DNA from: Oikopleura dioica
Lineage: Eukaryota > Animalia > Chordata
Assembly: GCA_907165135.1 (NCBI GenBank)
Contig: OU015569.1
Coordinates: 4,898,001-4,962,000 of the forward strand
Reading direction: 5' to 3'
Length of the DNA: 64,000 bases
The translations under genes were made by a program, and so were the position numbers. Shown piece by piece: positions 718 through 60,042 of the stretch. Below the pieces are notes generated by a model. The model was not told the DNA's origin. It searched no databases and saw only the letters and a program-made list of their open reading frames with translations. The stretch's first letter is position 1, and the number at the start of each line of letters is the position of its first letter.

Positions 718-1303
718 GCACCAAAACTAACACCTGTATTTAATATCTTCTGTACAAAAGTATATTTTTGTATTAATAATAAATATATTTGTCTAACTAA
801 AAACCGAGTCGATTGTTATCGAAATTCAAACTAACCCAGCGGGGTACTTTTGGTCTTTGCGGGGGAAGGAGATCATGATAATTATCATTACATTAGTAAA
901 GTACAGGTGTGTTTGGTGTGCCTTCATCGGATATCTTTGCTAGCTAGATATTACCAATAAGCAATTCCTGAGGTAAACGAAAAAACTTATTGCAAAATGG
1001 ATGTGAGATAATCTGTGAGATCAGCAGAAACTGATTATGTTTGGGAACGAGAATTTGAGAAAATCAAGGAAGAAATTTGTTGAGATATTTCCGAGTTGCG
1101 GAAAAATGTCTTTGCTTTGTCAGGTTGTTTGTATCAGAGTTGGAGTGATTCATTTCTGTAAGATCGGCCAATAACCTTTTCGGAAAGGAATGCGCGGTGC
1201 AAAAGAGGGAAAATGAGTATTCGATAGGAAAACGAGCTCACTCTTGCCTACTCAAAATTTTTGCTTGCAAAGGTTTAAGCTGATTGTTGAAAGAGACTGC
1301 ACG

Positions 1304-1750
1304 ATGGGAAAGGCAAAGACAGCCGCAAAATCGACGAAATCTTCGGCGAAATCAGGGCCGCCTTCGAAAAAAGCGACGAACTCAGCCTCTAAGAAGACAA
1401 CGATGAAAACAAAGACGCTTACAACGACGAAAGTCGTCGAGACAACGCTCACACGCAGCGAAGTGACCAGCAAAACAGCAACGACTTCTAAGCCCGCAAT
1501 CAAAAAGGCAACGAAGGAAGCTCCAGCTTTGAAAGCTCCACCCAAACAAGCCAACCCACTTCCAGTTCAGAAGAAAACTGCGTCAGGTATGAATACTACT
1601 CAATCGGCGACGAAAAAAGCTTCTGCGAAGCCGGCTCAGGCGAAGAAAACCGGCAGCGCATCGAAGAAGCCAAAAGAACCTGCGGGAATTACGATTACGC
1701 TCCCGGGCTCTGGAAAAGGGAAACCAATGACGATTACGATTAAAAAATAA
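1304..1750 (+). CDS. Intronless K/T/A/S/P-rich basic low-complexity protein (H1-tail or protamine-like), about 148 aa
   Basis: Open frame from ATG 1304 (MGKAKTAAKSTKSS...). Very Lys-rich, almost no acidic or aromatic residues, no recognisable globular domain. Confidence 0.6.
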   Translation: MGKAKTAAKSTKSSAKSGPPSKKATNSASKKTTMKTKTLTTTKVVETTLTRSEVTSKTATTSKPAIKKATKEAPALKAPPKQANPLPVQKKTASGMNTTQSATKKASAKPAQAKKTGSASKKPKEPAGITITLPGSGKGKPMTITIKK

Positions 1751-2168
1751 CTCCCCCTAAACTTAAAATTGTCCCCAAAAAATCGTGATGAAAATCAGGT
1801 TGAAATTTTTCTTGTTGCACTTTTCGAAATTCGGCAAAAAACTGTGCTCTTGGGCGCCTCTTGAACTCTCCACGGATAATTCTTGGTGAGTGTAGCGCCG
1901 CTAAATTTTCGCCTATAAAAAGGCAGATTTCGCCCCTTACCTCCACTCACACTTACAGAGCCACCGGAGAAACCTTCTCCGAGACTTGCAACGTCCTAAA
2001 ATTTTAACCTTTTTTCATCGCTTCTTTTTGTGCCCCTTTCCTTTCGTCGTTTTCCCTGTCCTTTTCGCCCCGCCCGTCAAACCCGCCAAGGAAAGGATAA
2101 TCAACAAGATGTTTTATAATATTATTATCATTTCATTTTCATAATCAAATTTCATTATCCTTCGTCAG

Positions 2169-2572
2169 ATGTGTTTCGAATGGCTTTTCGCTGGCAAGAA
2201 GACCAAGCTTGAGGCTGATCTCGAGAAAAACGAAGCACAGTTGACACGTGCCAAAGAACTTCTCTCCGAACATGATGAGGTTATCTTGAACCTCAAGGAT
2301 GAGGTCGCGCAGATAAGAGGCGACTCATTGAAACGAGGTAAGCTTTATCAAAGAACTTTCATTCCGAATCTTAAAATATTTTAGTCGCTCAGCCCCGAAG
2401 ATCGCGAACTGTCAACGCTCAACCTCGTCCCATCAATGCAGGACAACTTCGTCGACCTCGTTCTCCTCCACCGTCCTATGAGCACGTCAACTCACCGTCT
2501 ACAATGGTCTTGTCAAACTCCAGTACTCCATCTCCAACACTCTACTGGATCGCCACTGCTCCCCAGGAATGA
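2169..2572 (+). CDS. Small two-exon protein: N-terminal coiled coil plus Pro/Arg/Ser-rich tail with PPPSY motif
   Basis: Exon 2169-2337, GT-AG intron 2338-2384, exon 2385-2572 stays in frame to TGA. An acceptor-like tcag sits directly before the ATG. Confidence 0.6.
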
Positions 2573-3212
2573 AGTACACATCAGCCACCGAATCCTTTTT
2601 TTCCAACGCTTCCTTTCCTCTAAACCGCTAGAGTAACCCTTCCCGCTGTAAATCTCACTGAACCTCCACTTCGCATCACCGTCGCTCACCACTTTGTTTT
2701 TCTCGCCGATCTCTCCCGTGCCATTCATCTGTTTGAAACAGACTGTTTCTCAAAAGTTTTCAATCCTTGTTATCTTTTCTGCCCAATTTCGTCTCTCTCT
2801 AATTGTAGAGTAACCTCTCCTACTGTATATTTCCCTGAACCTTCACTTTCAATCACTGTCTCTTTCTACCGCCATGCCTTACCTTACTTAGGTAATCTCT
2901 TCTTCATTACTGACAAAATCAGTTGAAAACACGAATCAAGATAGAACCCAAAAATCCTTCGTCTTAAAATTTTTGCAGGAAAATTACAACTTAGATTTTA
3001 GATGAAAATAATCAGCAGGATTGATATTATCGCCGAGGCACTATTGTTTTTGACGCAAACTAGGGGATGAAAAATAGTTGAGCTTTCTTTTCGCCTTGGG
3101 GCGTAGTGCGCATCTGGATTGGCGTTCTATCCCTTCGTTGAGCCAATAGACTCCGCTTTGAATGCATTTTCGATGACTAGTGAGACAAGTACAAATCAAG
3201 AATTTTATTAAA

Positions 3213-4532
3213 ATGGAAAGTGCCGAAAAGAAGAAAGCCTCTGATGTGAAGGAGAAGCAGCCAGTCTCCGAAAAACCGACCAAGGACGAGAAAAAGCCGG
3301 AAAAGGAAGAAAAGCCAGAGGAAAATGGAAGCAGCGCCGCGAAGAAGCCAAAGAAGGAAGAAAAGAAACCGAAAGTCGAAAGAAAACGAAAATCAGAGCG
3401 TTCAGACAGTGTTTGAAAATCTTTTGATGAATTGCGGATTCGTACTCTTCCTTGATTCCACAAAACTATCTCCTTTCATCTCGAAGGATAAAATGTTCAG
3501 AGTTTTTTCATACTAGTAGCTTTCTTTTCTAGTTTAATCAAAGATCTACTCATTTCTTCTAAAACCCAATTTTCAAACAGAAAGAAGGCAGTTCTCGCGT
3601 TACCCGGAGCACGGATTTTTATGTTTCCATGGTAGAAGAGTGCATCAAGCTAGAACAACTTCAAGCAAAACGTAATCTAATCCATCAATTTCCTTTAGAA
3701 AACAACGATTTTTCAGAAGCAAAAGAAGCAAAATCTGAGCCCAAGCAGAAAAAGCCCGCCGCTCCTAAAAGTAGCGAGCCAAAGTCGAAGAAATCTCAAA
3801 AAGACGAACAGAAGCGGGCTTCTCAGAACGATGAAAGTGAGCCAATCGAGCGTACCTTTGGCGAGCTGAAAAATATCCTTCGCAATTCAACGACGATGGA
3901 TTTAGCCAAGAAGATTATTGGAGTGAATCTATGTCGCAGAATCGACGGACAGAAGATCATTGGCAGAATCGTCGACACGGAGGCTTATATAGGGTAAGAA
4001 ATTCTTATGTAATTTCTTCTACGAAGATAAATAATTCTAGCCCGGTTGACAAATGCTCGGTTACGTTCAAAAAGAAAAAATCAAAAGCGCTTGCTTCGTA
4101 TTTTGCTGAATCAGGTACCGCCTGCGTCGAGTTTGTTGAAGAAGGCAACACGCATTTGGCGATTTCTAGCGCTCTACCAGGCGAATACGTCCTTATCAGT
4201 GCTCTTCAGCCCATGCTCGGAAGGTATTATTAATCTTATTTCGCTTCGTATATTCGTTTTTCAGAGAGAAGATGAAATCGCTCCGCGGAATGCGGCCAAG
4301 CACGACGGACAAAAACCTGACGGCGACGGCAAAAGAGCTCGCCGCTGCGCTGAAAGTAACGATGGAGTTCGACGGACTCGACTTGCTCGAAGGAGGTGGC
4401 GACATTTGGCTGGAACCGGGCGTTACGTGCCCCAAAGTTGTCAAAACGCGCCGAGCTATTGACATGAACAACGAAAAAAATTGGCAAGAGGTTAGAACGC
4501 ACAACAAACCTACGATCTGTTCTTTCATATAG
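3213..4532 (+). CDS. Divergent 3-methyladenine DNA glycosylase (MPG/AAG)-like protein with long Lys/Glu-rich N-terminus
   Basis: Motifs DLAKKIIGVNLCRR, GRIVDTEAYIG, YVLISALQPMLG, ELAAALKVTMEFDGLDLL..GDIWLEPG and VVKTRRAI are collinear with the AAG fold. GT-AG introns near 3994 and 4224. The link to the N-terminal exon at 3213 is inferred from phase. Confidence 0.7.
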
Positions 4533-5599
4533 GCTTTTACAAATAAGCATTTTATTTTTTGACCCTAAGGTTAATTTCTATGCGATATTTTGGAATGTAT
4601 TCTTACATTCTTGGGGCAAAAATTAATTGAATGTCAGTCAATATGATTTTAAAAGTACAATGAGATTCGGGTTTATTTTCGCCCAAAATAGTCTCAAAAA
4701 CAATGCTAGATAGCGTATCATAATTGAAATAAATATAATCCCGATTCTCACGTCGAGGGCGCTCCCGATCATACTAACAATTGTCTAGTGGAGCTTCAAG
4801 AAACTTCGCTTTTACTCTGCCACTTCCCACTGCATCAAGACAAGAGATCAAAAGGAAGAACAGAATACAGGAATGGCTACTAAAAAAATTTCACTCGAAA
4901 AATGTAAGCTCAATTTCTGTAGCTTATCAAGTCTTGCAAACACTGCCGGAAGACGTCGACCATATATAACGATGAGCAACTAAGATTATCTTTTCAAATC
5001 AAATCAACTTTTGCTACATAACCGAGCATTAAAAAATCAAACCCTTTCTACGAAATTTAGCAAACCAAACCTAACCCTAGACTACATTTGAAAACGTGCG
5101 TCAGTACTCTATTATCACAGCATTGTTGAATTTCGAAAACGGAAGAATAAAGGCTCAGACATCAGTTTAACTCAATTCGAATTCTCACCAATTTGTTGAC
5201 CCGTTCTGCCTGTTCCATTGAAGATCGGATAGACCCACAGGAAAAAAAATCTTTCCCAGGTTGTCAATAAATTGGTGAAGATCCGCAGAGAGGTTGAGCT
5301 CGTTATCTTAACCTATTGCAACACTTGAATCGTATCTGCCAGCAACACACATAAACGCGTGCGAAACGTAACCCGCATCATCACGCATGGATCTTTAATC
5401 GCCAATATTTGCCTTTTCGCCAGTTTTTCTCATTTCTGTTTCATTTACCAAACACGGCGACCGCCGCGTTTCTAACATTTGCCTGAGAGAGCAATATCGC
5501 TATTGAATTTCTTTTCTCAAGAAAAAAAAAGAAAGCAAAAATAATCAAGACTATCACTTCCGTTTTTAAGACGTGTGTTAGACCATCATGAGTTAGAAA

Positions 5600-9999: not shown

Positions 10000-12882
10000 A
10001 TGGGCCAGTTTGACGTTAACATCAAATGGGGCAAGGAAAAGTTCAACGACATCACCGTAAATACTGATGAAGCGCCAGAAATCTTCAAGGCGCAGCTTTT
10101 CGCGCTCACCAATGTCCCACCAGGTCTATTATCTATGAATCTTCTGTTTTGCTAATTTTTATTTTTTTGAAGAACGGCAGAAGATCATGATCAAGGGAGG
10201 AGTGTTAAAGGACAGTTGGGACAACTTCCAGGGCAAATTGAAGAATGGCGCGATGATAATGCTGATGGGATCGGCCGACCCGCTTCCAGAAAAGCCCAAA
10301 GAACTGCCCCGATTCATGGAAGACATGGCAGATGCGGAGATGAATCAAGGAAAATGATAATCAATGATAAATCCATTCTCTTTTATTTAGTCTAGTTAAA
10401 GGAGCATGTAATATTCGCCAGATTTACAAAGTGTTGCGCTAAACGACAGATTTGAGATCATTAAGATTAAGATTGTTCCCATGTTGGTCCATACTGTTGT
10501 ATTTATGATGTTAAAGGCGAATTTTTTCGAGGTCAAGAGTGGTAGAAAAGAGAGAAGCATTTTTGTAGACAACTAATGTTCTACCTATTTATCCTGCCAG
10601 GCGCTCATTTATCTAAAAAACTACCAAATACTATAGATGAAATTCCATAAGAATTTTTTGGGCAAAAAAAATTCTTGTGAGTTATCAACATATTCTGAAA
10701 GCCCACATCAGAATTAGTAGATTCCCAAAATTCTAGCACTTGATGACGTCACGATGACGTCATTGGTGATGATTAAAGGTCCCGATCCCCAAAACCGTAG
10801 GTACGCTTTTTGAGGCTGTTTTTGTGAGAAAACTATTTTTTTCTTTCAAGGAGGTTGTTCAGCGTCGGAAACTTCGCGGGAATCCGGGTTCAAACCGGCC
10901 TTAACCAGCTGGTTACTTTGGCGGTTCAATCTTTAACCGGTCGGTTCGAAAAAATTCCTTCGGATTCCCGCGTAGTTTTTGACGCTGAACAACCTCCTTG
11001 AAAGAAAAAAATAGTTTTCCCACAAAAACAGCCTCAAAAAGCGTACCTACGGTTTTGGAAATCGGGACCTTTAATCATCACCTATGACGTCATCGTGACG
11101 TCATCAAGTGCTAGAATTTTGGGAATCTACTAATTCTGATGTAGGCTTTCAGAATATGTTGATAACTCACAAGAAATTTTTTTGCCCAAAAAATTCTTAT
11201 GGAATTTCATCTATACTTATTTCGCTTGTCAGAGATCCAATTTATATTTTTTTAAAAATAAACTATTTTCTAAAAATAAATAACTCCCTAACATGTTCTA
11301 TCTTTTAAGCTAGACTATGTTGAGCAAAACATTGTTGACTGTATTTCGTCGTGTTTTTGAGTCATATTTGCGAGAGCACTTGAAACCCAGGTGAAGCGGG
11401 TAGTTTTTTTTTAATAGAAATGATTGTATCGTAGAGAAGCAATAGTCAATTATCATTGAATAAGTGGCTAAGATTCCCGTCGGTATCGAGAACCTCGGCA
11501 ACACCTGCTACCTGAACTCGGTGATCCAATGTCTCCGCGTCATTCCGGAACTAAAAACTGCCCTTCAAGAGTACAGTCAATCCGACGCCTTTGTCAAGCA
11601 ACTGAAAGATCTGTGGAATTCGGTACCTTTAGTTTGCTTAGAATTTCCGTAAAAATATCAAAATAGCTTGACAATTCTCCGGAGGCAGCGAAGCCCATTG
11701 CCTTTTTGCTTGTGCTTCATGCAAACTTTCCTATTTTCGCCGAGCGAGGGCCTCAAGGAGGACTCAAGCAGCAAGACGCGAACGAAGCCTGGCTAAGCAT
11801 CTGCCGATATCTTCACCAATTGCCGGGAGCAGGAAACAAGGATCTCATGGAAGAGCTCTTCGGCGTCCAGTACAGGAGCGAAACAAAGTGCATAGAAGAA
11901 GGGGGCGAGACGGAGGCGAAAGTTGAGACAGACAAGCAGCTTTCTATTTCTGTGAGTGATGTCTTTTCGTTTCTTTTTGATCGATCAATTTAGTGCTTTA
12001 TCGACACTGACGTCAAATACTTGCTGACTGGTTTGAAAAAAAATCTTGTCGAGAAGATTGAAAAGAAGTCGGAAAAACTCGACCGCCAGGCACAATACGA
12101 AAAGGTATTTTCGTAATGTTTTCATGTGCTTATTAATCCGCTGATAGAACTCGACTATCGAAAGACTGCCACACTACCTTGCTGTTAACTTCATCCGATT
12201 CTATTACAAGACGGGCACTCAGAATTCCGCCAAAATTCTCAAAGGTAAGTCTCAAGTAATTCTCAAGAGTAATTTAGTTATGAGCACCGTATGAGCATGA
12301 TTTTTAGATGTTAAATTTCAAACAGAGTTTGATGCATGGGATCTCTGCGGGCCAAATCTTCAAGAAAAGCTCAAGCCAAACAGAGAGAAGCTCAAGTTGT
12401 TGACTGACAAAGAGCTCGATCTGTTGTCCCGAAAGAAGAAAAACGGGGTGCGCAAAATCGGTGAGTTTGCCGATCCCGTTTCAATATAAAATGTATATTC
12501 GAAGAACCACCAAAGTACACTCAGTTCGAAAAGACACACTTCGACGAAGACCATGGCTCCAACAACCACGGTTGGTACACTCTCAAGGCAGTTCTCACGC
12601 ACAAGGGTCGATCAATTGACGGCGGCCATTACATTGCCTGGACCAAACAAGAAGACGGCAGATGGATTAAATTCGACGACGACAAGGTAGCCTTCCTCTT
12701 TATTTTTATCCTCGCAATGTTCCTCATCTTAGGCAACTGTTGTAACAGAAGAAGAAGTATTGGCACTTTCTGGCGGTGGCGACTGGCACACTGCCTATAT
12801 CTGCATCTTCGAGACGAAGAAATTGCCCGTCTTCACCCCTGACCTTGAAAATGATCAAATGGAGAACATGGAGACCAGCTAA
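10000..12882 (+). CDS. USP14: Ubiquitin carboxyl-terminal hydrolase 14 (Ubp6)
   Basis: UBL N-terminus (VNIKWGKEKF, QKIMIKGG, LMGSAD); Cys box GIENLGNTCYLNS; QQDANE; His box VLTHKGRSIDGGHYIAW; LSGGGDWHTAY. Confidence 0.95.
10632..11215. mobile_element. Hairpin MITE (about 255-bp arms, 74-bp spacer, TA-flanked) in USP14 intron 2
   Basis: 10632-10886 is the near-perfect reverse complement of 10961-11215. The ends TA-TAGATGAAATTCC...GGAATTTCATCTA-TA fit a TA target site (Tc1/mariner-like). Confidence 0.85.
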
Positions 12883-13084
12883 AGATACATTCTACAAAAG
12901 AAAAAAAATAAGTTTTTAAGTTCACACCTTACCGCTACTGATACATGTAACTTACTTCAAGCATTCTCTGACTGACTTGTAGCAATCAACAAAAACAGAA
13001 CAGTACTTGTTTTCCTATTAAAGCAATAAAAAGATAATTAGAGGACTTGTGTTGTGTGAAATTTAGGCTCTAGCTTTAGACAGA

Positions 13085-16000
13085 ATGGTCCACAGAGACA
13101 TTTCGATTCATATCGGACTGGATGAGGTTTATGTCGAAGGGAATGGGGAAGTTCTCTTGATAAATCGTCAGACAGGGGCCATCGACGATCACAAATCGCA
13201 AGCTATTCCCACCCAGGACCGAGTTGTTCAATGTCTTGGGCTCTTTGGAATAATCAAGCTCCCAGGCTCGGTTATAATTATAAATTTTTACTCTTTTGGA
13301 GAGAGCTAGTCTAAGTCGTTCTTTTTACAACCAATTCAAAGCGGGCAATCATCTTGTCGTCATCAAAAGAGCCAAGAAGGTCGGAGACCTGTCACAAAAG
13401 AGCATCTTCCAGGTAGAAGAAACCGAAATCATCCCGATCACGCCTTCGAAAGCACGCAATCAAGGCATCGAGCAGGACAATGCCACATTTGTCGCCATGC
13501 TAAACCAAGTGCTCGCCACGCCGTCCTTTTACTTTTCCTACAATCTCGACCTCACACATACGCAGCAGAGGCTTGCCCACACGACAACCGATTTCAGAAG
13601 TCAACCGTTGATTCAACGCGCCGACCACCGATTCATTTGGAACGGGCACATGCTCCAGCCCAGGGTCTAGCAAAATTGGATGCGCGTTGGGTGACGCTGC
13701 GCCGTGGCGCCTCTCTCTCATCCCCGCCCCGGGTGCGCGCTTGAAAGTCCGCCAAAAATCGGAGGATTATCGTCATCCTAGAGTCATCCGAGCGCGGATG
13801 ACGATTTGGCGCGCTTGTGCTTTACGCTGTGCGCGGGGTGTCCGAAAAGCATTAGGGCCCGCTCAAATCTAAATGGGTGCGAACAGTGACCCAGTAATGG
13901 AAATCAGATGCAAATAACAGCGGGAGTAGAAAGGTTTCAGAAACAAGAAGATTCATGTTATAACAAAGAAAATTAGAAGCACGTGTCAGTGAAAAATCAC
14001 CATATTTGTGGATTCAAACTTTGCTTTCCATATGCTACCATGAAGTTTAACTCTTAGTGGAGAAGGCCCCTGGCCCCCTTTCCCGTACCCCGCGCAAATT
14101 ACTTTCGGGGAAGTCAAGAAAATTTCTTTAACGCATGCACGGCGGCTTAGAGCGATCTCGAGATTCTGAAGAACAGAATCTGGAAAGCCTGACCCAATCA
14201 GAGAGCCGACAAGGTTTTTTGCGATGACTGTAGCTGCTCTTGCCGCGAAATTGCGCGCGCTCCACATTGAGCGACTCTCAGGGCCAGGGTCGCTCAGATT
14301 CTCCTATCTCCACTTAGAGCTCAAATCCATGGTATAGCATTTTTGTTCAGATAAATTTCTGTATTATGAGAATTAGCTCAAAGGTCATTATTTATGAGTA
14401 TAATATAGTCTAAACAGAGTTTATCATAATACAAATTATAAACTTTAATTTACCTAGCTGAATAAAATATGGCTAAAGTAGCTAGAGCTGGCGCGAATAT
14501 ACAAAATAGTAATAATAAATCAGACCTAGGAGCGCAAATGGGAGCGGGAAAGCAGGCGCGCCGATCAGCGTTTGATCGTCATCTACCCCCGGATGATATT
14601 TGCGCGGTCACCCACCGCGGGGAGGACTGAGAGGCGCTAAGGCGCATAGTCATCCTACGCGCATCCAATTTTGCGAGCCCCTGCTCCAGCCCTTTATAGA
14701 ACGTAGATTTTATCAGGAAAGGTTGTCCAAAAAGCATCACGTAACTTTTTAACGATCGTCTGGACAACCATCGTTAGTTCTGCCTTCCAATAATTCACGG
14801 TTTCGTCGCTATCAAACCGATCTTTTTGAACGGATGCTCTTTCGACTGGGTTATCATCTCGAGAAGAAGCATTTACCGAGTCGGGACACGCTACTTTGTC
14901 AGAGGTAGGCAAGCTAGTCAAGTGAAAGTTCGAAATTTACAATTGTGTATTCAGGAGCGGATTTGGATGGAAACGTGGCGAATTACGTTGAGACAGAGCA
15001 ACTTGTGCAGTTCAACAAGAGCGTCGCGTCATTTGTTCTCACGCGTGGCTCAATCCCTTTCCAGTGGACACAACGGCCCAACATCAAGTACAAGCCTAAG
15101 CCAAAACTCAACAATCAAAACGACCAGTTGCTCATCTACAAGCGTCACATCGACGAGCAAGTAGTCCTCTACGGGCGCCAAGTGCTTGTCAATCTGATCG
15201 ATCAAAAAGGGGGCGAAAAGGTACTTTCGTTTATCCCCCAGTTACCTCATTTTATCATCCAATTATTCAGCTGCTAGAATCGCAGTTCTCTGACATTTAT
15301 CACAGAGCAGATAATAAGAAAGTGCGTTACGTGCATTTTGACTTCCACAAGGAGTGTTCAAAAATGCGCTGGCATCGGCTTTCTATTCTCATGGACAAAT
15401 TAAAACAAGATATCGAAGATCATGGATACTACTTCTCGACGAACGAGTCCACTCTTCAAAGACAGGTAAAATAAACTCAGAAATTGGAGCATTCTTTAAT
15501 CAGAGATATTGTTATCTTTGATATTAACGGAATAACGACTGTATGTTTATCATATTAAAGACTGGAGTGTTCCGAGTCAACTGCATCGATTGCTTGGACC
15601 GCACAAATGTAGTACAGTCCATGCTGGCAAAAGTCATTCTTGAAGAACAGCTCTTGAAACTGGGTGTTTTCAAACAAGGAAACCTTCTTTCGTCCTTCCC
15701 GGAATTCGAGTCCACTTATCGAAACGGTAAGCTTCATTGTCAATTAATAAGTGATGCGTTTACCGTGATTTCAACTGATGATGCGTTTTTCGTCAAATAA
15801 TGACAAATTATGAATAAATAAAGCTCCTTATTGTTCGTCACTACGAGCAACGGTGGGAACGCGGCTAGTGCTATTCTAAAGAGGATACATTTTACAAGCC
15901 ACTTTTGCTCTTGAGAGAGATGTGGGCTAAAGAGCTTCGTTTTTTCTTTCAACATCAAGAGTTTGCAAGTTTGCTTCAGTGTGGGCCGACAATGCAGACG

Positions 16001-16711
16001 CCTGTAGCACGCAGTACTCCGGAACCGGAGCGCTCAAGACAGACTACACAAGGTAATTTAAGATATCTTCTCGAATAATATCGCAAGCGAACTCCATCTC
16101 AAGGCAATTCCAATAAACGTACAAAAGAGTTTCGTTTATCAGCCAGATACTTGTCGATAACGGACACATTTCCACTCTCTTTGTGCGAGTTTTTATCGCC
16201 GAGTCGATATCGAATTGAGCTGATGGTTTTCCTTTAGAACCGGGGTGAGGACAAAACTAGGTTTGCTTCAAGACGGCAAAAACTCGGCTATCCGCTATTA
16301 TAAAAATAACTTCTGCGACGGTTTCCGACAGGTTCTCCTTCTTTTCTATTTTCATGGCGACAAATGCTTGTCTAGGATAGTTTGGACTTCTTTCTGGGCA
16401 ATTTCGTGTGGGATGACAACAAAGTATCGCCTTTCAGAGACAGTGCTCAACTCAAAGTGCGCATTATTCCCATTCTAGCGCTGGTCTCACTCTCCATGGC
16501 TATCATCGGTCTTTTGCTGCCTCCAAGTAAGTTCCTTGTTCTTTTCGCAAAGATTAACATTGATTGTTAAGGCGAGTCTCTACTAGAGCAAATGCTCTTC
16601 ATTTGCTTCTGGATTCTAACTGGGGTGGGCTCGTGCTTCTATGTGCTCCGTCACGGGCCTTATTACGTTAACCAGCCCCTGCTGGTGCACAAGCTTCAAA
16701 AGGATATATGA
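13085..16711 (+). CDS. SACM1L: Phosphatidylinositol-4-phosphate phosphatase SAC1
   Basis: [11 protein letters not shown]; RFIWNGH; [17 protein letters not shown]; [11 protein letters not shown]; [10 protein letters not shown]; catalytic CX5RT motif [15 protein letters not shown]; [14 protein letters not shown]; two C-terminal TM segments. Confidence 0.95.
13661..14683. mobile_element. 1023-bp non-autonomous hAT-type element inserted in a SAC1 coding exon
   Basis: 8-bp TSD CTCCAGCC (13653-13660 and 14684-14691). TIRs CAGGGTCTAGCAAAATTGGATGCGCG and CAGGGGCTCGCAAAATTGGATGCGCG. No transposase ORF. Confidence 0.9.
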
Positions 16712-43611: not shown

Positions 43612-43774
43612 AAGGGGTTCGCGCGAACGCAGAACCCCACTATCAGAAATTGTGACGGACACTCCACCGATTTGGCAAAGAGATACAGGTCAGCCGCGCC
43701 GGTGTGCAATGGTACGGCCTCGCCATAAGGGAACCCCCTACTTGATCGAGGTTACCCTCCGCCCAGGTAAGTAT
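43612..43774 (-). ncRNA. RNU1: U1 snRNA
   Basis: Reverse strand reads AUACUUACCUG; SL1 loop GAUCAAGUAG; SL2 loop AUUGCACACC; Sm site AAUUUCUG; SL4 GGGGUUCUGCG-UUCG-CGCGAACCCC. About 163 nt, with helix H (GGCGG/CCGUC) intact. Confidence 0.95.
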
Positions 43775-44078: not shown

Positions 44079-44160
44079 CGCTGCGAACAGGATTCGAACC
44101 TGCGCGGGGAGACCCCAAGAGATTTCTAATCTCTCGCCTTAACCACTCGGCCATCGCAGC
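44079..44160 (-). tRNA. tRNA-Ser(AGA)
   Basis: GCTGCGA/TCGCAGC acceptor stem; D-loop TGGCCGAGTGG; AGAGA-TT-AGA-AA-TCTCT anticodon arm; long variable arm; GGTTCGAATCC; discriminator G; oligo-T terminator downstream. Confidence 0.96.
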
Positions 44161-45333: not shown

Positions 45334-48300
45334 TCAGTAATGAAGATCAGCATTTTCTTTGATCCAGGCGTTAATTTCCGGGTCCGAATTCCGCGACCAG
45401 CAAGCTAGAATTTCATTAATTCTAGTTCTTGTTCAATTAGAGCAATAAATGATTAACTAGTATCCAGCAAGACTTTGTTGACGATAAACTAGCCTCTATC
45501 AAATTAGAGAATAATTGACTGGGTTTCGTCTTGCGACGTATTTTTGCTCCAAATCTACTTCTTCTGGATAACAAGAATCTAATCGATTGAATGGCAGTAA
45601 ACTAGTTAAAAGCAGATGTGCGATTAATATTTTCGTCGACATTGTTTTCAAGGGTATTTTACCAAAGTAAAATCGCAAAATTGACAAGATATTTCTGAAG
45701 ATTTTTATCTTTAGATTCTTAAGTTTAGAATGATAATTTTGCTAACCCTCTTTTTATGTCTAGACTGATTTCGCAAGCTTCACTGACCTGGCCACTCGTG
45801 GCTGCAAGCTGCGTCTCCCCACGAAGTATTACCGACGAGTCTTAGTTCTCCGTTTAGCTCAACCACGAGCGGTCCTCCCGAGTCGCCGTTACAGCTCATC
45901 ATTCGGCTATGAGCTGGCTGAGCCGGAACTCGATCTTTTCCGGAATGGAAAATTAAATTAAGTCGGAGCCCATTTTGCCGCAAACGGCTTATCCCTTTCC
46001 CGGGCCACCTTCAAGAGGTAACATTTTAATCAGTCACACTCCGACCTAAAGCGCAGGGGTTGCTTGGCTTGATCCAACTCATTTCGGGAACAGGGCTCTC
46101 AGCAAACTCGGATCCAACACGAAGTTGGAACTGCGGCCCGTCAGCAGTCTTTATCCGGGTTCAATTTTGTCAGCTAATTGCCTCTTCGTCAAGCCCCTAA
46201 ATAACGAAACAGTCCGCAATCTTATCTTTGTAGACCGTTTAGAAAATTTTTATTTCTCATCCTTATCAGCTGTTTCTTCATTCTTCACTGGAATCTTCAC
46301 GAGCTGAGGATCATTCCAAGCTCCGTGAAAAAGGTTTTAATCCTCTATTACGACCCAAAGGATGATCGCAGTACTTTTTGCCACGTAAATGCTGAGTACT
46401 ACGTAATAACGCTAAACTTTAAAAAATGAGCTACGCGAAGAGCAGGTGCGCTGCAACCAGAATTTTCAGTTGCAAGCGAAATTTCTAAAATTCTTGTACA
46501 AGTTTCAACTTCTGCGCAAAGTAACTCTTTCTTTTCTGAATAAAATTGAAGCCCGTCCCCAAGTCCAAGTGACACCACCGCAGTTTTCATAATTCAAGGC
46601 CGCTCTTTGAGCATCTTCAAGATCGTCGAAGTCGATTTGATCCCAAGAAAGATCGGGGTATCCTTTCAAATAGGCGTAGTCTTTCTTTTCCCAGCCTTCC
46701 AGAGGTGTGCACAATTCAGGCCTTTTATCCTGGGTCTCTTTCGCTGCTTTTTATACGAAAAGTAACTTAATTGGTACGGAAGCGGATAAAATTGGACCCG
46801 TTGTCAAGCATCCTGTTCTCCCGGGACTCCAATAGCGCACTGCTGTCTTGAGCCACCGGCGTAGGGTCCCCACCACTTCTTACACTCCCGGATGGTGATG
46901 GCTAAATGCAATTGATGGGTTGCGGATTGAGAGAGCTAATGCCGGAAAGAGGCGATCCTCGAAACGTGCTCAGCGGGTGTCGTCCTTCTAACGCCCCTCA
47001 ACCGAGTCTAAAGTAGTTCTACCTTTGTAGTATCCGTACTGGAGCGGCTCCACCCGGGCTGTTGAATTTTGAGCGATTCACTTAGGAACACTATTCATTC
47101 GCCCTGTGTCATGCGTACTTTCCAGATAAATCACCATAAAAATGGTTTTTAAGGAGCTCGACTACACTCCTCAAACAGAAGAGCGTTTTCGAAGGAAAGA
47201 CTCGTATTATTTCTGGTCAAAAAGAAGCCACATCGTTTTAATGACTACTATGATTATGTTTTAGATTTTTTTTATAAAAAATTCAACGTGAGTTAATGAT
47301 AACTCGCAGATTTGACAGCCTGTCCTTTCCGTCGTAGCCGCCGGGGTTGGTCCTTCCGAATCCAGTTTCGAACATAGTGGTGCCCATCGGAAACTCGTGC
47401 TCCATTGGGTCCATCAATTTAATTGGGGCTACAGCGCTCGGAAAAGAGACCAGGTCGATTTGAGTCTTTGCGCGGAGGATTCCAAAGTCGTAGTCCAAGT
47501 AGTCGGCTCCCCAGTTGGGGTGGCTGAGGAATTGATCCGACATCACGTAATAAAATGGACGATCGTCTCGTAAACTGCCAAAGACCATTCGGACATCGTT
47601 CTAAGTTTTTTATGACTCATCGCCGGGTTGTATTATAATATGGCCTTCTGTGGATTCTAAAGTTGATGAATGGAACTTACTCGAATATTGCAATGCGCTG
47701 CAGACATCACATACTTGTGACGATTCTTTCTTACTTTACATAATAATTATTTTCTTCTCAATTCGAAAAGGAGCGCATGGGAATCTTAGCTGGCCTCGGA
47801 TTTCCAAAATAGTTTTTATCAAAAACTAGTTTGGGAAACGTGTTGCAAGCACTTCCCTATCTCACGCCGCCGCCTAAGTGGAAATGTTTAATAGCGATTT
47901 TTATTCAACTATCAAAAAATGCTCCTTATCTTTTAGGATGAAGCCGCGGAGGATAGCGGGTCTACAGATATTGTTCATTTTTAAATGACCGATAATTGAA
48001 ATACTCACAGAGACTTTGCAAATTATCGACAGATAAATCGGGCTAATTATGGTCTTATTGAGGCATTTTCTAGTCTAAGAAATGAATGAAAAATCGCTCC
48101 TTATCGCTGAGAATAGATCCTCCACAGAACTTGCCCCCACCGGGGTATTGGAGCGAAACCATGTAAGGTGCACTTTCGGTCTTCAGTACATCATTCCCTT
48201 CGATAATTTTGACGGAGCGCGCGGCGGCACATGAGTAGGCTTGTAAGATGAAAATTCGGCCCACTTTTCTAACTTAGTTTAGGGGTCGGATGACACAGTT

Positions 48301-49080
48301 TTAGAAAGCCCAGAAGCTAAGCTTTCATTTGGGCACCATATCAAGTGGTCTGGGTCATGCCCCCAAGGCAATTCATTGGACCGGAAGTTCCGAAATCGGC
48401 ACAAGAACTCTTCAATAGAATTTTCGAGTACCGGTAGTCACTCGAAATGGCTCGATAGTAGGCGCGTTAGAAAGCCCAGCGTCTGATCTTTCTAAAAAGC
48501 CAATAAAAATACTGCTGCTCTGCCACCTAGTGGCCACTAGAGGCGCTAAAATAGTGAAATTTGAGGATATTTAGGAAGGAAGGACAATAATCTACGTCTC
48601 AACCGGACGGTTTGATGACCGTTGAACGTCATGCCAAGGCTAAGAAGTCATTATTCAAAAATAGAGGCCTGAAATTTCGACCGAATGAGCAACTTCTAGT
48701 GCAAAAAATTCCCTTTCTGGGGCAGAATTCGAGTTTCTAGCGCCCCTAGTGGCCGCTAGGTGGGAGAGCAGCTAGATTTTATTGATGGTTAAGAAAGCTC
48801 AGACGCATGGCTTTCTAACGCGCCTACTCTCGAGCTATTTCGAGTGACTACCGGCACTCAAAAAATAGATTGAAGAGTTCTAGTGCCGATTTCGGAACTT
48901 CCGGTGCCATGAATTGCCTTGCGGGTATGACCCAGACCCCCCGATATTAGACTCAAATGAAAGCTCAGCTTCTGGGATTTCCAAATATGTGTCATATGAC
49001 CCCTCAACTAAGCTAGAAAAATTGGCCAAATTTTCATCTTATAAGCCTACACATGAGGCTAGTCCAAGCGCAAACTTCAT
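45334..49080 (-). CDS. Secreted S1 (chymotrypsin-family) serine protease, multi-exon
   Basis: MKFALGLAS signal start at 49080; activation site K-IIEG; KFCGGSIL; SAAHC; DYDFGIL; GFGRT; SCNGDSGGP; GNTSWG; ends INAWIKENADLHY*. Catalytic triad intact. Confidence 0.88.
48236..49049. mobile_element. 814-bp non-autonomous hAT-type element inserted in the signal-peptide exon of the protease
   Basis: 8-bp TSD CACATGAG (48228-48235 and 49050-49057); termini TAGGCTT(G/A)TAAGATGAAAATT; inverted arms of about 310 bp. Confidence 0.9.
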
Positions 49081-59605: not shown

Positions 59606-60042
59606 CAGGGCGGTCTAATTTGCATTCTTGTAAATAGTCTTTTTTCCGAAGACTATTCATTTATTCTTATAAGATTAATCTCGACGCGAGATTAGTCTGT
59701 TTGAATAAAAAAGATTAATTCGGGAAATTTTCGAAATAGTTCCGAGATTATTTCAAATAATCTTGAAACGCGCGCTGTGATTGGTGGACCAATGGCCGAC
59801 GGCGCGAGAGAAAAATGAAAAAACATGCTTGGAGCGCAGCTTGAAATTTTGTCCGCGCCGCCTCGCACTGCTCACAGCTCGCCAGCGCCACCCAAATTTT
59901 TCCCCCGAGCCACGCGACCCTCGCTAAAAAGATTAATCTCGAAACTAGTCCAGTCTTGACTAATCTCAGAATCTTTTTCCAAAGAAGATTAATCTCGCAA
60001 ATTTTCGAGATTATTTACAAGAATGCAAATTAGACCGCCCTG
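59606..60042. mobile_element. 437-bp hAT MITE
   Basis: 8-bp TSD GTTAGAGC (59598-59605 and 60043-60050); perfect 31-bp TIR CAGGGCGGTCTAATTTGCATTCTTGTAAATA; several subterminal AGATTAATCTC-like repeats. Confidence 0.92.

What the first reader, a model, noticed from the sequence alone, without database searches (positions are those of the whole stretch)
13653..14716. hAT transposon inside a SAC1 coding exon that can be spliced out as an in-frame intron (introner-like)
Seen: a 1023-bp element with CAGGG TIRs and a perfect 8-bp TSD (CTCCAGCC) interrupts ...NGHMLQP^FIERRFYQ. Read-through hits TAG at 13668. The left TIR gives a donor (AGG|GT, 13665) and the right TSD copy gives an acceptor (CTCCAG|, 14689), so a 1025-nt GT-AG intron leaves [14 protein letters not shown], in frame with +2 aa. 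The donor T is one of only two differences in the first 26 nt between the TIRs (right TIR reads CAGG|GG). Known: hAT elements make 8-bp TSDs, and transposon-derived intron gain is established in larvaceans. Inference: this is a recent intron gain in a conserved lipid phosphatase, creating a 27-nt microexon (14690-14716).
Basis: partly seen in the sequence, partly recalled or inferred. Interest (0 to 1): 0.85.

Follow-up and report, generated by a model that had tools for sequence, protein, structure and literature searches.

The report
Young transposon inside Oikopleura SAC1 exon
A 1-kb hAT-type transposon has very recently landed in a coding exon of the conserved lipid phosphatase gene SAC1 in an Oikopleura dioica genome; another individual still has the untouched site, and the element could be spliced out in frame as a newborn intron, but no RNA could be brought to the junction, so that step is unproven.

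Summary
A 1023-bp element (13661-14683) with 80-nt imperfect inverted ends starting CAGGG is flanked by a perfect 8-bp duplication (CTCCAGCC). It splits a SAC1 exon between ...NGHMLQP and FIERRFYQ, and read-through stops at TAG 13668.

New here:
- A second individual's DNA (X7) carries the exact empty site, 1031 bp missing, on flanks about 1% diverged. The insertion is therefore a young, segregating polymorphism.
- In the source-like DNA run (X1), contigs cross both junctions without a branch, which suggests no intact allele there.
- With the element removed, the gene model is 578 aa and aligns without gaps (93.4% identity) to Bergen O. dioica SAC1. The Bergen gene is uninterrupted here.
- Two AG acceptors (14689 and 14677) are in frame with the GT donor at 13665, adding 2 or 6 residues.

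Against splicing: this donor is the weakest in the gene, the intron would be about 20 times the usual length, and the added residues fall in a predicted helix.

No RNA read or contig reached the junction, so splicing is untested. The element family is low-copy, so it is not an "introner" family by the usual criterion. The scan had already flagged similar exon-borne hAT insertions elsewhere in this genome, also without RNA.

The parts
13085..16708 (+). SAC1 (SacI-domain phosphoinositide phosphatase) coding region: 11 exons plus the transposon
   Evidence: Pfam Syja_N matches. The exon model with the element removed is 578 aa, 93.4% identical and gapless to P0151, which belongs to the Bergen O. 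dioica SAC1 cluster with CBY09991.1.
13342..13660 (+). Coding exon interrupted at its 3' part (ends ...NGHMLQ-P)
   Evidence: RNA contig X9 covers 13340-13580 and is joined to the upstream exon, so the gene is transcribed and the GC-AG intron 13266-13341 is spliced.
13653..13660 (.). Left copy of the 8-bp target-site duplication CTCCAGCC
13661..14683 (+). 1023-bp non-autonomous hAT-type element with no transposase ORF
   Evidence: The longest internal ORF is 93 aa and nothing is transposase-like. No Rfam match.
13661..13740 (+). Left terminal inverted repeat (starts CAGGGT); holds the candidate GT donor at 13665-13666
   Evidence: (pair I1).
14604..14683 (-). Right terminal inverted repeat (reverse complement starts CAGGGG); holds AG 14676-14677
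   Evidence: (pair I1).
13668..13670 (+). In-frame TAG reached if the element is not removed
   Evidence: ORF 13296..13670.
14684..14691 (.).
13665..14689 (+). Candidate intron 1: 1025 nt, AGG|GT...CAG|, leaves +6 nt (Arg-Pro)
   Evidence: In frame. No RNA evidence was obtained.
13665..14677 (+). Candidate intron 2: 1013 nt, AGG|GT...GAG|, leaves +18 nt (RPLLQP). The footprint is 4 + 6 nt of element plus the 8-nt duplication
   Evidence: In frame (variant alt18). No RNA evidence.
14030..14333 (.). Nested high-copy miniature element of about 0.3 kb inside the hAT element (28-nt inverted ends 14036-14063 / 14307-14334)
   Evidence: pair I2. Depth is 1000-4600 against 41-97 in the flanks, and an X7 contig of another copy skips exactly 14030-14333.
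14690..14716 (+). 27-nt microexon (PFIERRFYQ) that would exist if candidate intron 1 is used
14717..14777 (+). 61-nt GA-AG intron with a 9-bp perfect inverted repeat near its ends; exactly absent from the Bergen gene

Best explanation
Shown: a non-autonomous hAT-type DNA transposon, itself carrying a nested high-copy miniature element, inserted recently into a coding exon of the single SAC1 gene of a non-Bergen Oikopleura dioica lineage. The insertion made an 8-bp target duplication. It is still polymorphic: one sequenced individual has the exact empty site, while the source-like individual shows only the filled site.

Inferred: animals that carry only the filled allele are alive, so the element is most likely removed from the pre-mRNA as an intron of about 1 kb. 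The donor would be the GT at positions 5-6 of the left inverted repeat (exon ends at 13664). The acceptor would be one of two in-frame AGs: CAG| in the right duplication copy (14689, +2 residues, Arg-Pro) or GAG| inside the right inverted repeat (14677, +6 residues). Pairing of the 80-nt inverted ends would bring donor and acceptor within a few nucleotides of each other. That may help a spliceosome that normally handles introns of about 50 nt.

Not shown: the splicing step itself, which acceptor is used, and how efficient removal is.
For: Insertion anatomy.

The filled site is real. X1 contigs of 2,563 and 14,876 nt run through the left and right junctions with 0 differences and without a branch. 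The unique parts of the element have about the same depth (75-87) as the flanks (68-97).

The empty site exists. An X7 contig joins 13650 to 14682, skipping 1031 nt with 11 ambiguous letters, at the full flank depth of 46.5. Its flanks differ from the window at 10 of 945 and 4 of 531 positions.

The ancestral state is uninterrupted: all Bergen-type proteins read MLQPFLQRKFYQFCLP, the Bergen genomic locus L020 is uninterrupted, and so are two other larvacean-like contigs, L001 and L003.

X1 laid no second SAC1 copy at 88% identity or more.

Both acceptors are in frame with the GT donor.

The inverted ends pair in both the minimum-energy and the centroid RNA folds.

This gene already uses GC and GA donors and one weak GT donor, CAG|GTTCTC. 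About 11% of O. dioica introns are non-canonical (PMC8008620) and many are GA-AG (PMC7072748).

The same gene has two further introns that are exactly absent from the Bergen gene. One is GA-AG with inverted-repeat ends.

The segment between RFxWN and LPxxxG varies from 14 to 28 residues in 140 SAC1 homologues.
Against: No RNA read or contig covers 13580-14690.

The donor AGG|GTCTAG matches the U1-complementary consensus at only 3 of 9 positions, the lowest in the gene. The U1 gene in this window has the canonical 5' end.

The donor lies inside the predicted stem formed by the inverted ends, which could hide it from the spliceosome.

A 1025-nt intron is about 20 times the median of 49 bp (PMC8008620).

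The added residues fall inside a confidently predicted short helix (residues 162-170 of the model, pLDDT about 96). That is 3 residues upstream of where homologues actually vary in length.

Being in frame is weak evidence, because it has roughly a 1 in 3 chance.

The absence of an empty allele in X1 is inferred from contig continuity and depth, and contigs can drop variants.
Confidence: 0.5

Rival explanations
1. The insertion is simply a null or strongly hypomorphic SAC1 allele. Transcripts read into the element, hit TAG at 13668 and are degraded or give a truncated protein. The allele persists because it is young and recessive, and the in-frame GT-AG pairs are coincidence.
For: The weakest donor of the gene. 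The intron would be very long for this genome (PMC8008620). The footprint lies in a predicted helix. An intact empty allele segregates in the same lineage, and the natural-population RNA contig carries the single-base variants of the empty-site haplotype (13373A, 13493T). Heterozygosity in this population is high, about 3.6% (PMC8008620), so recessive lesions can hide.
Against: X1 contigs pass both junctions without branching, and the element's depth equals the flank depth, so no empty allele is visible in that sample. X1 shows no second SAC1 copy at 88% identity or more. SAC1 is essential in flies and mice (established knowledge, not tested here).
Confidence: 0.3
2. The element is removed, but by another route than the reader's. 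Possible routes are a non-canonical exact excision (CC...AG, 13659-14689, which restores MLQPFIERR), skipping of the microexon (13664 joined to 14778, in frame, losing PFIERRFYQ), or use of cryptic sites inside the element.
For: O. dioica uses many non-GT donors (PMC8008620, PMC7072748). 13664^14778 is in frame (variant skipmicro). The base of the stem formed by the inverted ends juxtaposes the two duplication copies.
Against: Near the ends, G-start...AG pairs are in frame only with the donor at 13665, by my enumeration. A CC donor has no precedent in the papers read here. Skipping the microexon deletes 9 conserved-domain residues.
Confidence: 0.12
3. Assembly artefact: the element was mis-placed into the gene by the assembler.
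For: The middle of the element is a high-copy repeat.
Against: A perfect 8-bp duplication. Short-read contigs of X1 cross both junctions with 0 differences, and the precise 1031-bp empty site in X7 matches the element plus one duplication copy exactly.
Confidence: 0.02

Closest known systems
Maize Ac/Ds (hAT superfamily), including Ds and Ds1 insertions spliced from exons
   Same: An 8-bp target duplication. The termini start C/TAGGG, as in the Ac/Ds ends C/TAGGGATGAAA (PMC3260210). Ds and Ds1 provide splice donors and/or acceptors close to their termini when inserted in genes (PMC5395267, which cites Wessler 1991).
   Different: The host is an animal. The inverted ends are 80 nt and imperfect, against 11 bp in Ac/Ds. 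There is no sequence similarity beyond CAGGG, no autonomous partner was identified, and splicing is not demonstrated here.
Introner elements: DNA-transposon-derived introns of Micromonas and Aureococcus, and the 175 genomes surveyed by Gozashti et al. 2022
   Same: The logic matches. A transposon with inverted ends lands in an exon, one splice site comes from the element and the other from, or next to, the target duplication (review PMC11282704; PMC9860276).
   Different: Introners are defined as families present in many introns. Here read depth indicates only about 2-3 copies of the outer element, and no spliced copy has been seen. The candidate intron leaves a 6- or 18-nt footprint rather than restoring the exon.
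MITE-derived non-canonical introns of the larvacean Fritillaria borealis (Henriet et al. 2019, as summarised in PMC11282704)
   Same: Same animal class. Introns there carry inverted ends and target duplications, sit at lineage-specific positions, and are handled by a spliceosome tolerant of odd splice sites.
   Different: Those introns are short, old, numerous and mostly AG-AC or AG-AT. This is a single 1-kb presence/absence polymorphism with a GT-AG option in O. dioica, where a transposon origin of introns is not established in the papers I could read.

Membership tests
hAT superfamily DNA transposon (non-autonomous) | 8-bp target-site duplication | tested here: met
   CTCCAGCC on both sides, 8 of 8. 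The empty site in X7 lacks exactly the element plus 8 bp.
hAT superfamily DNA transposon (non-autonomous) | Terminal inverted repeats beginning C/TA(A/G)NG | tested here: met
   Both ends start CAGGG, and the arms are 80 nt at 80% complementarity. Compare the Ac/Ds ends C/TAGGGATGAAA (PMC3260210).
hAT superfamily DNA transposon (non-autonomous) | hAT transposase (DDE core, hAT C-terminal dimerisation domain), in the copy itself or in an autonomous partner with the same ends | tested here: not met
   This copy has no ORF longer than 93 aa. No partner could be sought because the rest of the genome is not searchable. The 18-nt end motif gave only chance hits in metagenome contigs. The assignment rests on structure alone.
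Introner / transposon-derived spliceosomal intron | The element is removed from mRNA by the spliceosome | not testable with these tools
   The single read-laying run gave no RNA over 13580-14690. No Okinawa-type transcripts are in the protein or contig collections.
Introner / transposon-derived spliceosomal intron | A family of near-identical copies forming introns in many unrelated genes | tested here: inconclusive
   Depth over the element-specific parts is about 2-2.5 times single copy in X7, which lacks this insertion. X1 holds one short derivative of about 240 bp (13748 joined to 14536). There are no other copies in the 64-kb window. This suggests a low copy number, but where the other copies sit is unknown.
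Introner / transposon-derived spliceosomal intron | Splice sites supplied by the element's end and/or the target duplication, preserving the frame | tested here: met
   Met at the sequence level only. GT lies at element positions 5-6. AG lies in the duplication (14688-89) and 6 nt inside the 3' end (14676-77). Both are in frame.
SAC1 phosphoinositide phosphatase (host gene) | SacI homology domain with the CX5R(T/S) catalytic motif, and orthology to annotated SAC1 | tested here: met
   Pfam Syja_N matches with E-values from 1e-9 to 1e-31 on three exons. The motif [10 protein letters not shown] is present. The model is 93.4% identical over 578 aa to the cluster holding O. dioica SAC1 CBY09991.1. 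The upstream neighbour, a UCH-type gene, is the same as at the Bergen locus.

The most novel reading that the evidence does not exclude
hAT elements of this O. dioica lineage neutralise themselves. The inverted-repeat consensus CAGG|G(T/G)...(N)AG|NCCCTG puts a G-start donor 4 nt inside the 5' end and an AG 6 nt inside the 3' end, in either orientation. With the 8-bp duplication, every exonic insertion can then be spliced out leaving an 18-nt, frame-neutral footprint. If so, such insertions are the ongoing, population-level source of the lineage-specific and non-canonical introns of Oikopleura, for example the 61-nt GA-AG intron with inverted-repeat ends that starts 26 nt downstream of the insertion and is absent from the Bergen gene. 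This would be intron birth caught as a presence/absence polymorphism in an essential animal gene.
Probability: 0.2. Interest if true: 0.85.

Novelty: new member of a known kind. Interest (0 to 1): 0.55.

Why it matters
How new spliceosomal introns arise in animals is mostly inferred from old, decayed cases. This locus has all three states in hand. The ancestral exon is seen in Bergen O. dioica and other larvaceans. An empty allele and a filled allele segregate within one lineage. The filled allele sits in a gene expected to be essential, and the source-like sample shows no intact copy.

If RNA from filled-site homozygotes shows in-frame removal, this would be a direct observation of transposon-to-intron conversion within an animal population. 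It would also link O. dioica's extreme intron turnover and its roughly 11% non-canonical introns to active hAT elements. If RNA shows no such splicing, the locus is an ordinary young loss-of-function insertion.

Tried and rejected
1. RNA evidence. Of the RNA runs offered, X13 (raw reads, same species label) proved to be another lineage: none of its 21 laid reads was 95% identical or better, and all fell at 15023-15628. The X9 metatranscriptome contigs stop at 13580.

2. A scan of metagenome contigs with one pattern covering the empty site and the +6 and +18 spliced junctions gave 0 hits.

3. A scan with the 18-nt inverted-repeat core gave 16 hits. All were chance matches without the neighbouring repeat sequence.

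4. The protein route to find an annotated or transcript-derived Okinawa-type SAC1 failed. The exon query found nothing. The profile query found only the Bergen-type cluster, so no gene model of this assembly could be inspected.

5. I briefly thought the upstream intron began with the same CAGGGTCT as the element. The sequence is in fact CAG|GCTCGG, a GC-AG intron, so I dropped the idea.

6. The element has no transposase ORF and no Rfam family.

7. Searching earlier findings by sequence gave nothing.

8. I treated the +2/+6 residue site as a free loop on the grounds that homologues vary in length there. This holds only in part. The model puts the site inside helix 162-170, and the natural length changes lie 3 residues further on.

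Full report
**1. What is in the sequence**

Positions 13661-14683 form a 1023-bp block. Its ends are inverted repeats of 80 nt at 80% complementarity (pair I1). The first 26 nt of the two ends differ only at position 6 (T on the left, G on the right) and position 9.

The block is flanked by CTCCAGCC at 13653-13660 and again at 14684-14691. The 26-nt end motif occurs nowhere else in the window, where 0 matches are expected by chance, and blastn finds no second copy in the 64 kb.

The block has no ORF above 93 aa and nothing transposase-like. It has no Rfam match. Inside it lies a second, nested element at about 14030-14333, with 28-nt inverted ends (pair I2).

**2. The host gene**

Three flanking exons match the SacI homology domain (Pfam Syja_N). 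The exon that ends at the insertion covers profile positions 12-116, and the exon after the microexon starts at position 127.

I built the exon model with a homologue as guide. With the element and one duplication copy removed it gives a 578-aa protein. That protein aligns without a single gap, at 93.4% identity, to P0151. P0151 represents the 90% cluster that contains the annotated Oikopleura dioica SAC1 proteins CBY09991.1 and CBY40345.1.

The window therefore belongs to the O. dioica species complex but not to the Bergen lineage. Earlier notes of this scan call it the Okinawa genome, which I could not check directly.

The gene has ten ordinary introns. Their donors are one GC, one GA and eight GT. 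The GC-AG intron 13266-13341 is confirmed by an RNA contig of run X9 that joins the two exons.

**3. Effect of the insertion**

Read-through gives ...MLQPRV and then TAG at 13668.

I listed donor and acceptor pairs of the G-start...AG type near the two ends. Only the donor after 13664 (AGG|GT) is in frame. It is in frame with two acceptors:
- CAG| at 14689, in the right duplication copy.
- GAG| at 14677, inside the right inverted repeat. This gives a 1013-nt intron and adds RPLLQP.

The second pair lies wholly within the element. It leaves 4 + 6 nt of element plus the 8-nt duplication, 18 nt in all, so it preserves the frame wherever such an element lands. The chance of that is 1 in 3, so it is noted rather than claimed as design.

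**4. Recency: the empty site exists**

I laid four runs on 12700-15700.

*X1.* This DNA run is the best holder and may be the sample the window was assembled from. One contig of 2,563 nt runs from the left flank to 13748, and one of 14,876 nt runs from 14654 into the right flank. Both have 0 differences and neither breaks at a junction. The unique parts of the element have depth 75-87, against 68-97 for the flanks.

*X7.* This DNA run carries a different organism label. One contig joins 13650 to 14682 and skips exactly 1031 nt, the element plus one duplication copy, with 11 ambiguous letters as expected. Its depth of 46.5 is the full flank depth, and the contig continues 530 nt into the right flank. 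The X7 flanks differ from the window at 10 of 945 and 4 of 531 positions. That is about 1%, well within the roughly 3.6% heterozygosity reported for the Okinawan population (PMC8008620).

So the insertion is a segregating presence/absence polymorphism. X7 looks homozygous empty. X1 looks filled without an empty allele, although contigs can drop variants, so this last point is an inference.

*Deeper comparisons.* All Bergen-type proteins read MLQPFLQRKFYQFCLP. The Bergen genomic locus (L020, assembly GCA_000209535.1) is uninterrupted at this site. Two other larvacean-like metagenome contigs are uninterrupted there as well.

**5. Family size**

In X7, which lacks this insertion, depth over the element-specific parts is about 2-2.5 times single copy. 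X1 also holds a shorter derivative of about 240 bp, in which 13748 is joined to 14536 with GGG between. The nested element is high-copy, with depth 1000-4600.

The outer element is therefore a low-copy, recently active family. It is not a large introner family.

**6. Is it spliced? Not testable here**

- The one raw RNA run laid (X13) is from a diverged lineage. It gave 21 reads, none at 95% identity or better, all at 15023-15628.
- The X9 metatranscriptome contigs are nearly identical to the window but end at 13580. They also carry the two single-base variants of the empty-site haplotype.
- Pattern scans for the empty, +6 and +18 junctions in metagenome contigs found nothing.
- No proteins of this lineage are in the protein collections.

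**7. Indirect evidence for splicing**

- There is no visible intact allele and no second SAC1 copy at 88% identity or more in X1. The gene is essential in other animals, which is established knowledge and was not tested here.
- Both nearby acceptors are in frame.
- The inverted ends pair in the minimum-energy and centroid RNA folds, which places donor and acceptor next to each other.
- O. dioica tolerates unusual donors. About 11% of its introns are non-canonical (PMC8008620) and many are GA-AG (PMC7072748).
- The same gene has two introns that are exactly absent from the Bergen gene. The first, the 61-nt GA-AG intron 14717-14777, has a perfect 9-bp inverted repeat near its ends; the second is the 50-nt intron 14905-14954.

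**8. Indirect evidence against splicing**

- The donor AGG|GTCTAG matches the U1-complementary consensus at 3 of 9 positions, the worst in the gene. The U1 gene in this window has the canonical 5' end.
- The donor lies within the stem formed by the inverted ends.
- The intron would be about 20 times the median length (PMC8008620).
- In an AlphaFold model of the Bergen-type protein (mean pLDDT 91), the insertion point falls inside helix 162-170. Homologues vary in length 3 residues further on, not at the site itself.

**9. Comparison with known systems**

Structurally the element fits hAT: an 8-bp duplication and ends like the Ac/Ds C/TAGGG termini (PMC3260210). No transposase could be tied to it.

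Functionally the proposal matches two known cases. Maize Ds and Ds1 have termini that provide splice sites (PMC5395267). Introners take one splice site from the element and the other from the target duplication (PMC11282704, PMC9860276). Within larvaceans, introns derived from miniature transposons are documented for Fritillaria borealis (summarised in PMC11282704). I found no such documentation for O. dioica in the papers I could read.

**10. Verdict**

The interpretation as a newborn intron is plausible but unproven; I put it at about 0.5. The main rival is a young null allele, at about 0.3.

This scan had already flagged several similar exon-borne hAT insertions elsewhere in the same genome, all without RNA. 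This case is one more member of that set. Its added value is the demonstrated polymorphism.

Noticed in passing
window 14717-14777: A 61-nt GA-AG intron whose ends carry a perfect 9-bp inverted repeat (GGTTGTCCA / TGGACAACC). It is exactly absent from the Bergen O. dioica gene, although another larvacean contig (L001) has an intron at about the same place. It may be an old relic of a small inverted-repeat insertion.
   Followed up: partly
window 14905-14954: A 50-nt GT-AG intron, also exactly absent from the Bergen gene (VRG|ADL is contiguous there). It shows intron turnover between O. dioica lineages within a single gene.
   Followed up: partly
window 14030-14333: A nested miniature element of about 304 bp inside the hAT element, flanked by ATA on both sides, present at very high copy number (depth 1000-4600). 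Another copy of the outer element in X7 lacks it precisely.
   Followed up: partly
window 59606-60042: Another hAT-like miniature element of 437 bp, with 30 of 30 identical inverted ends (CAGGGCGGTCTAATTT...) and a perfect 8-bp duplication, GTTAGAGC. It is evidently very young. No long ORF spans its reconstructed empty site, so it is probably not in an exon.
   Followed up: partly
window 48228-49057: An 814-bp element (48236-49049) with ends TAGGCTTGTAAGATGAAAATT (20 of 21 matching) and the 8-bp duplication CACATGAG. It belongs to a different family from the SAC1 element.
   Followed up: partly
window 43612-43774 (- strand) and 44079-44160 (- strand): A U1 snRNA gene with a canonical 5' end (AUACUUACCUG; 114.9 bits) and a tRNA gene close by.
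   Followed up: partly
window 12731-13025: An RNA contig (X9) joins the last exons of the upstream ubiquitin-hydrolase-like gene and runs to 13025, only 60 nt before the SAC1 start codon at 13085. The spacing is very tight and could reflect an operon.
   Followed up: no
X1 contig, window 13748 joined to 14536: A deletion derivative of the same hAT element, about 240 bp long (both ends kept, GGG at the join), exists elsewhere in the source-like genome at about half the flank depth.
   Followed up: no
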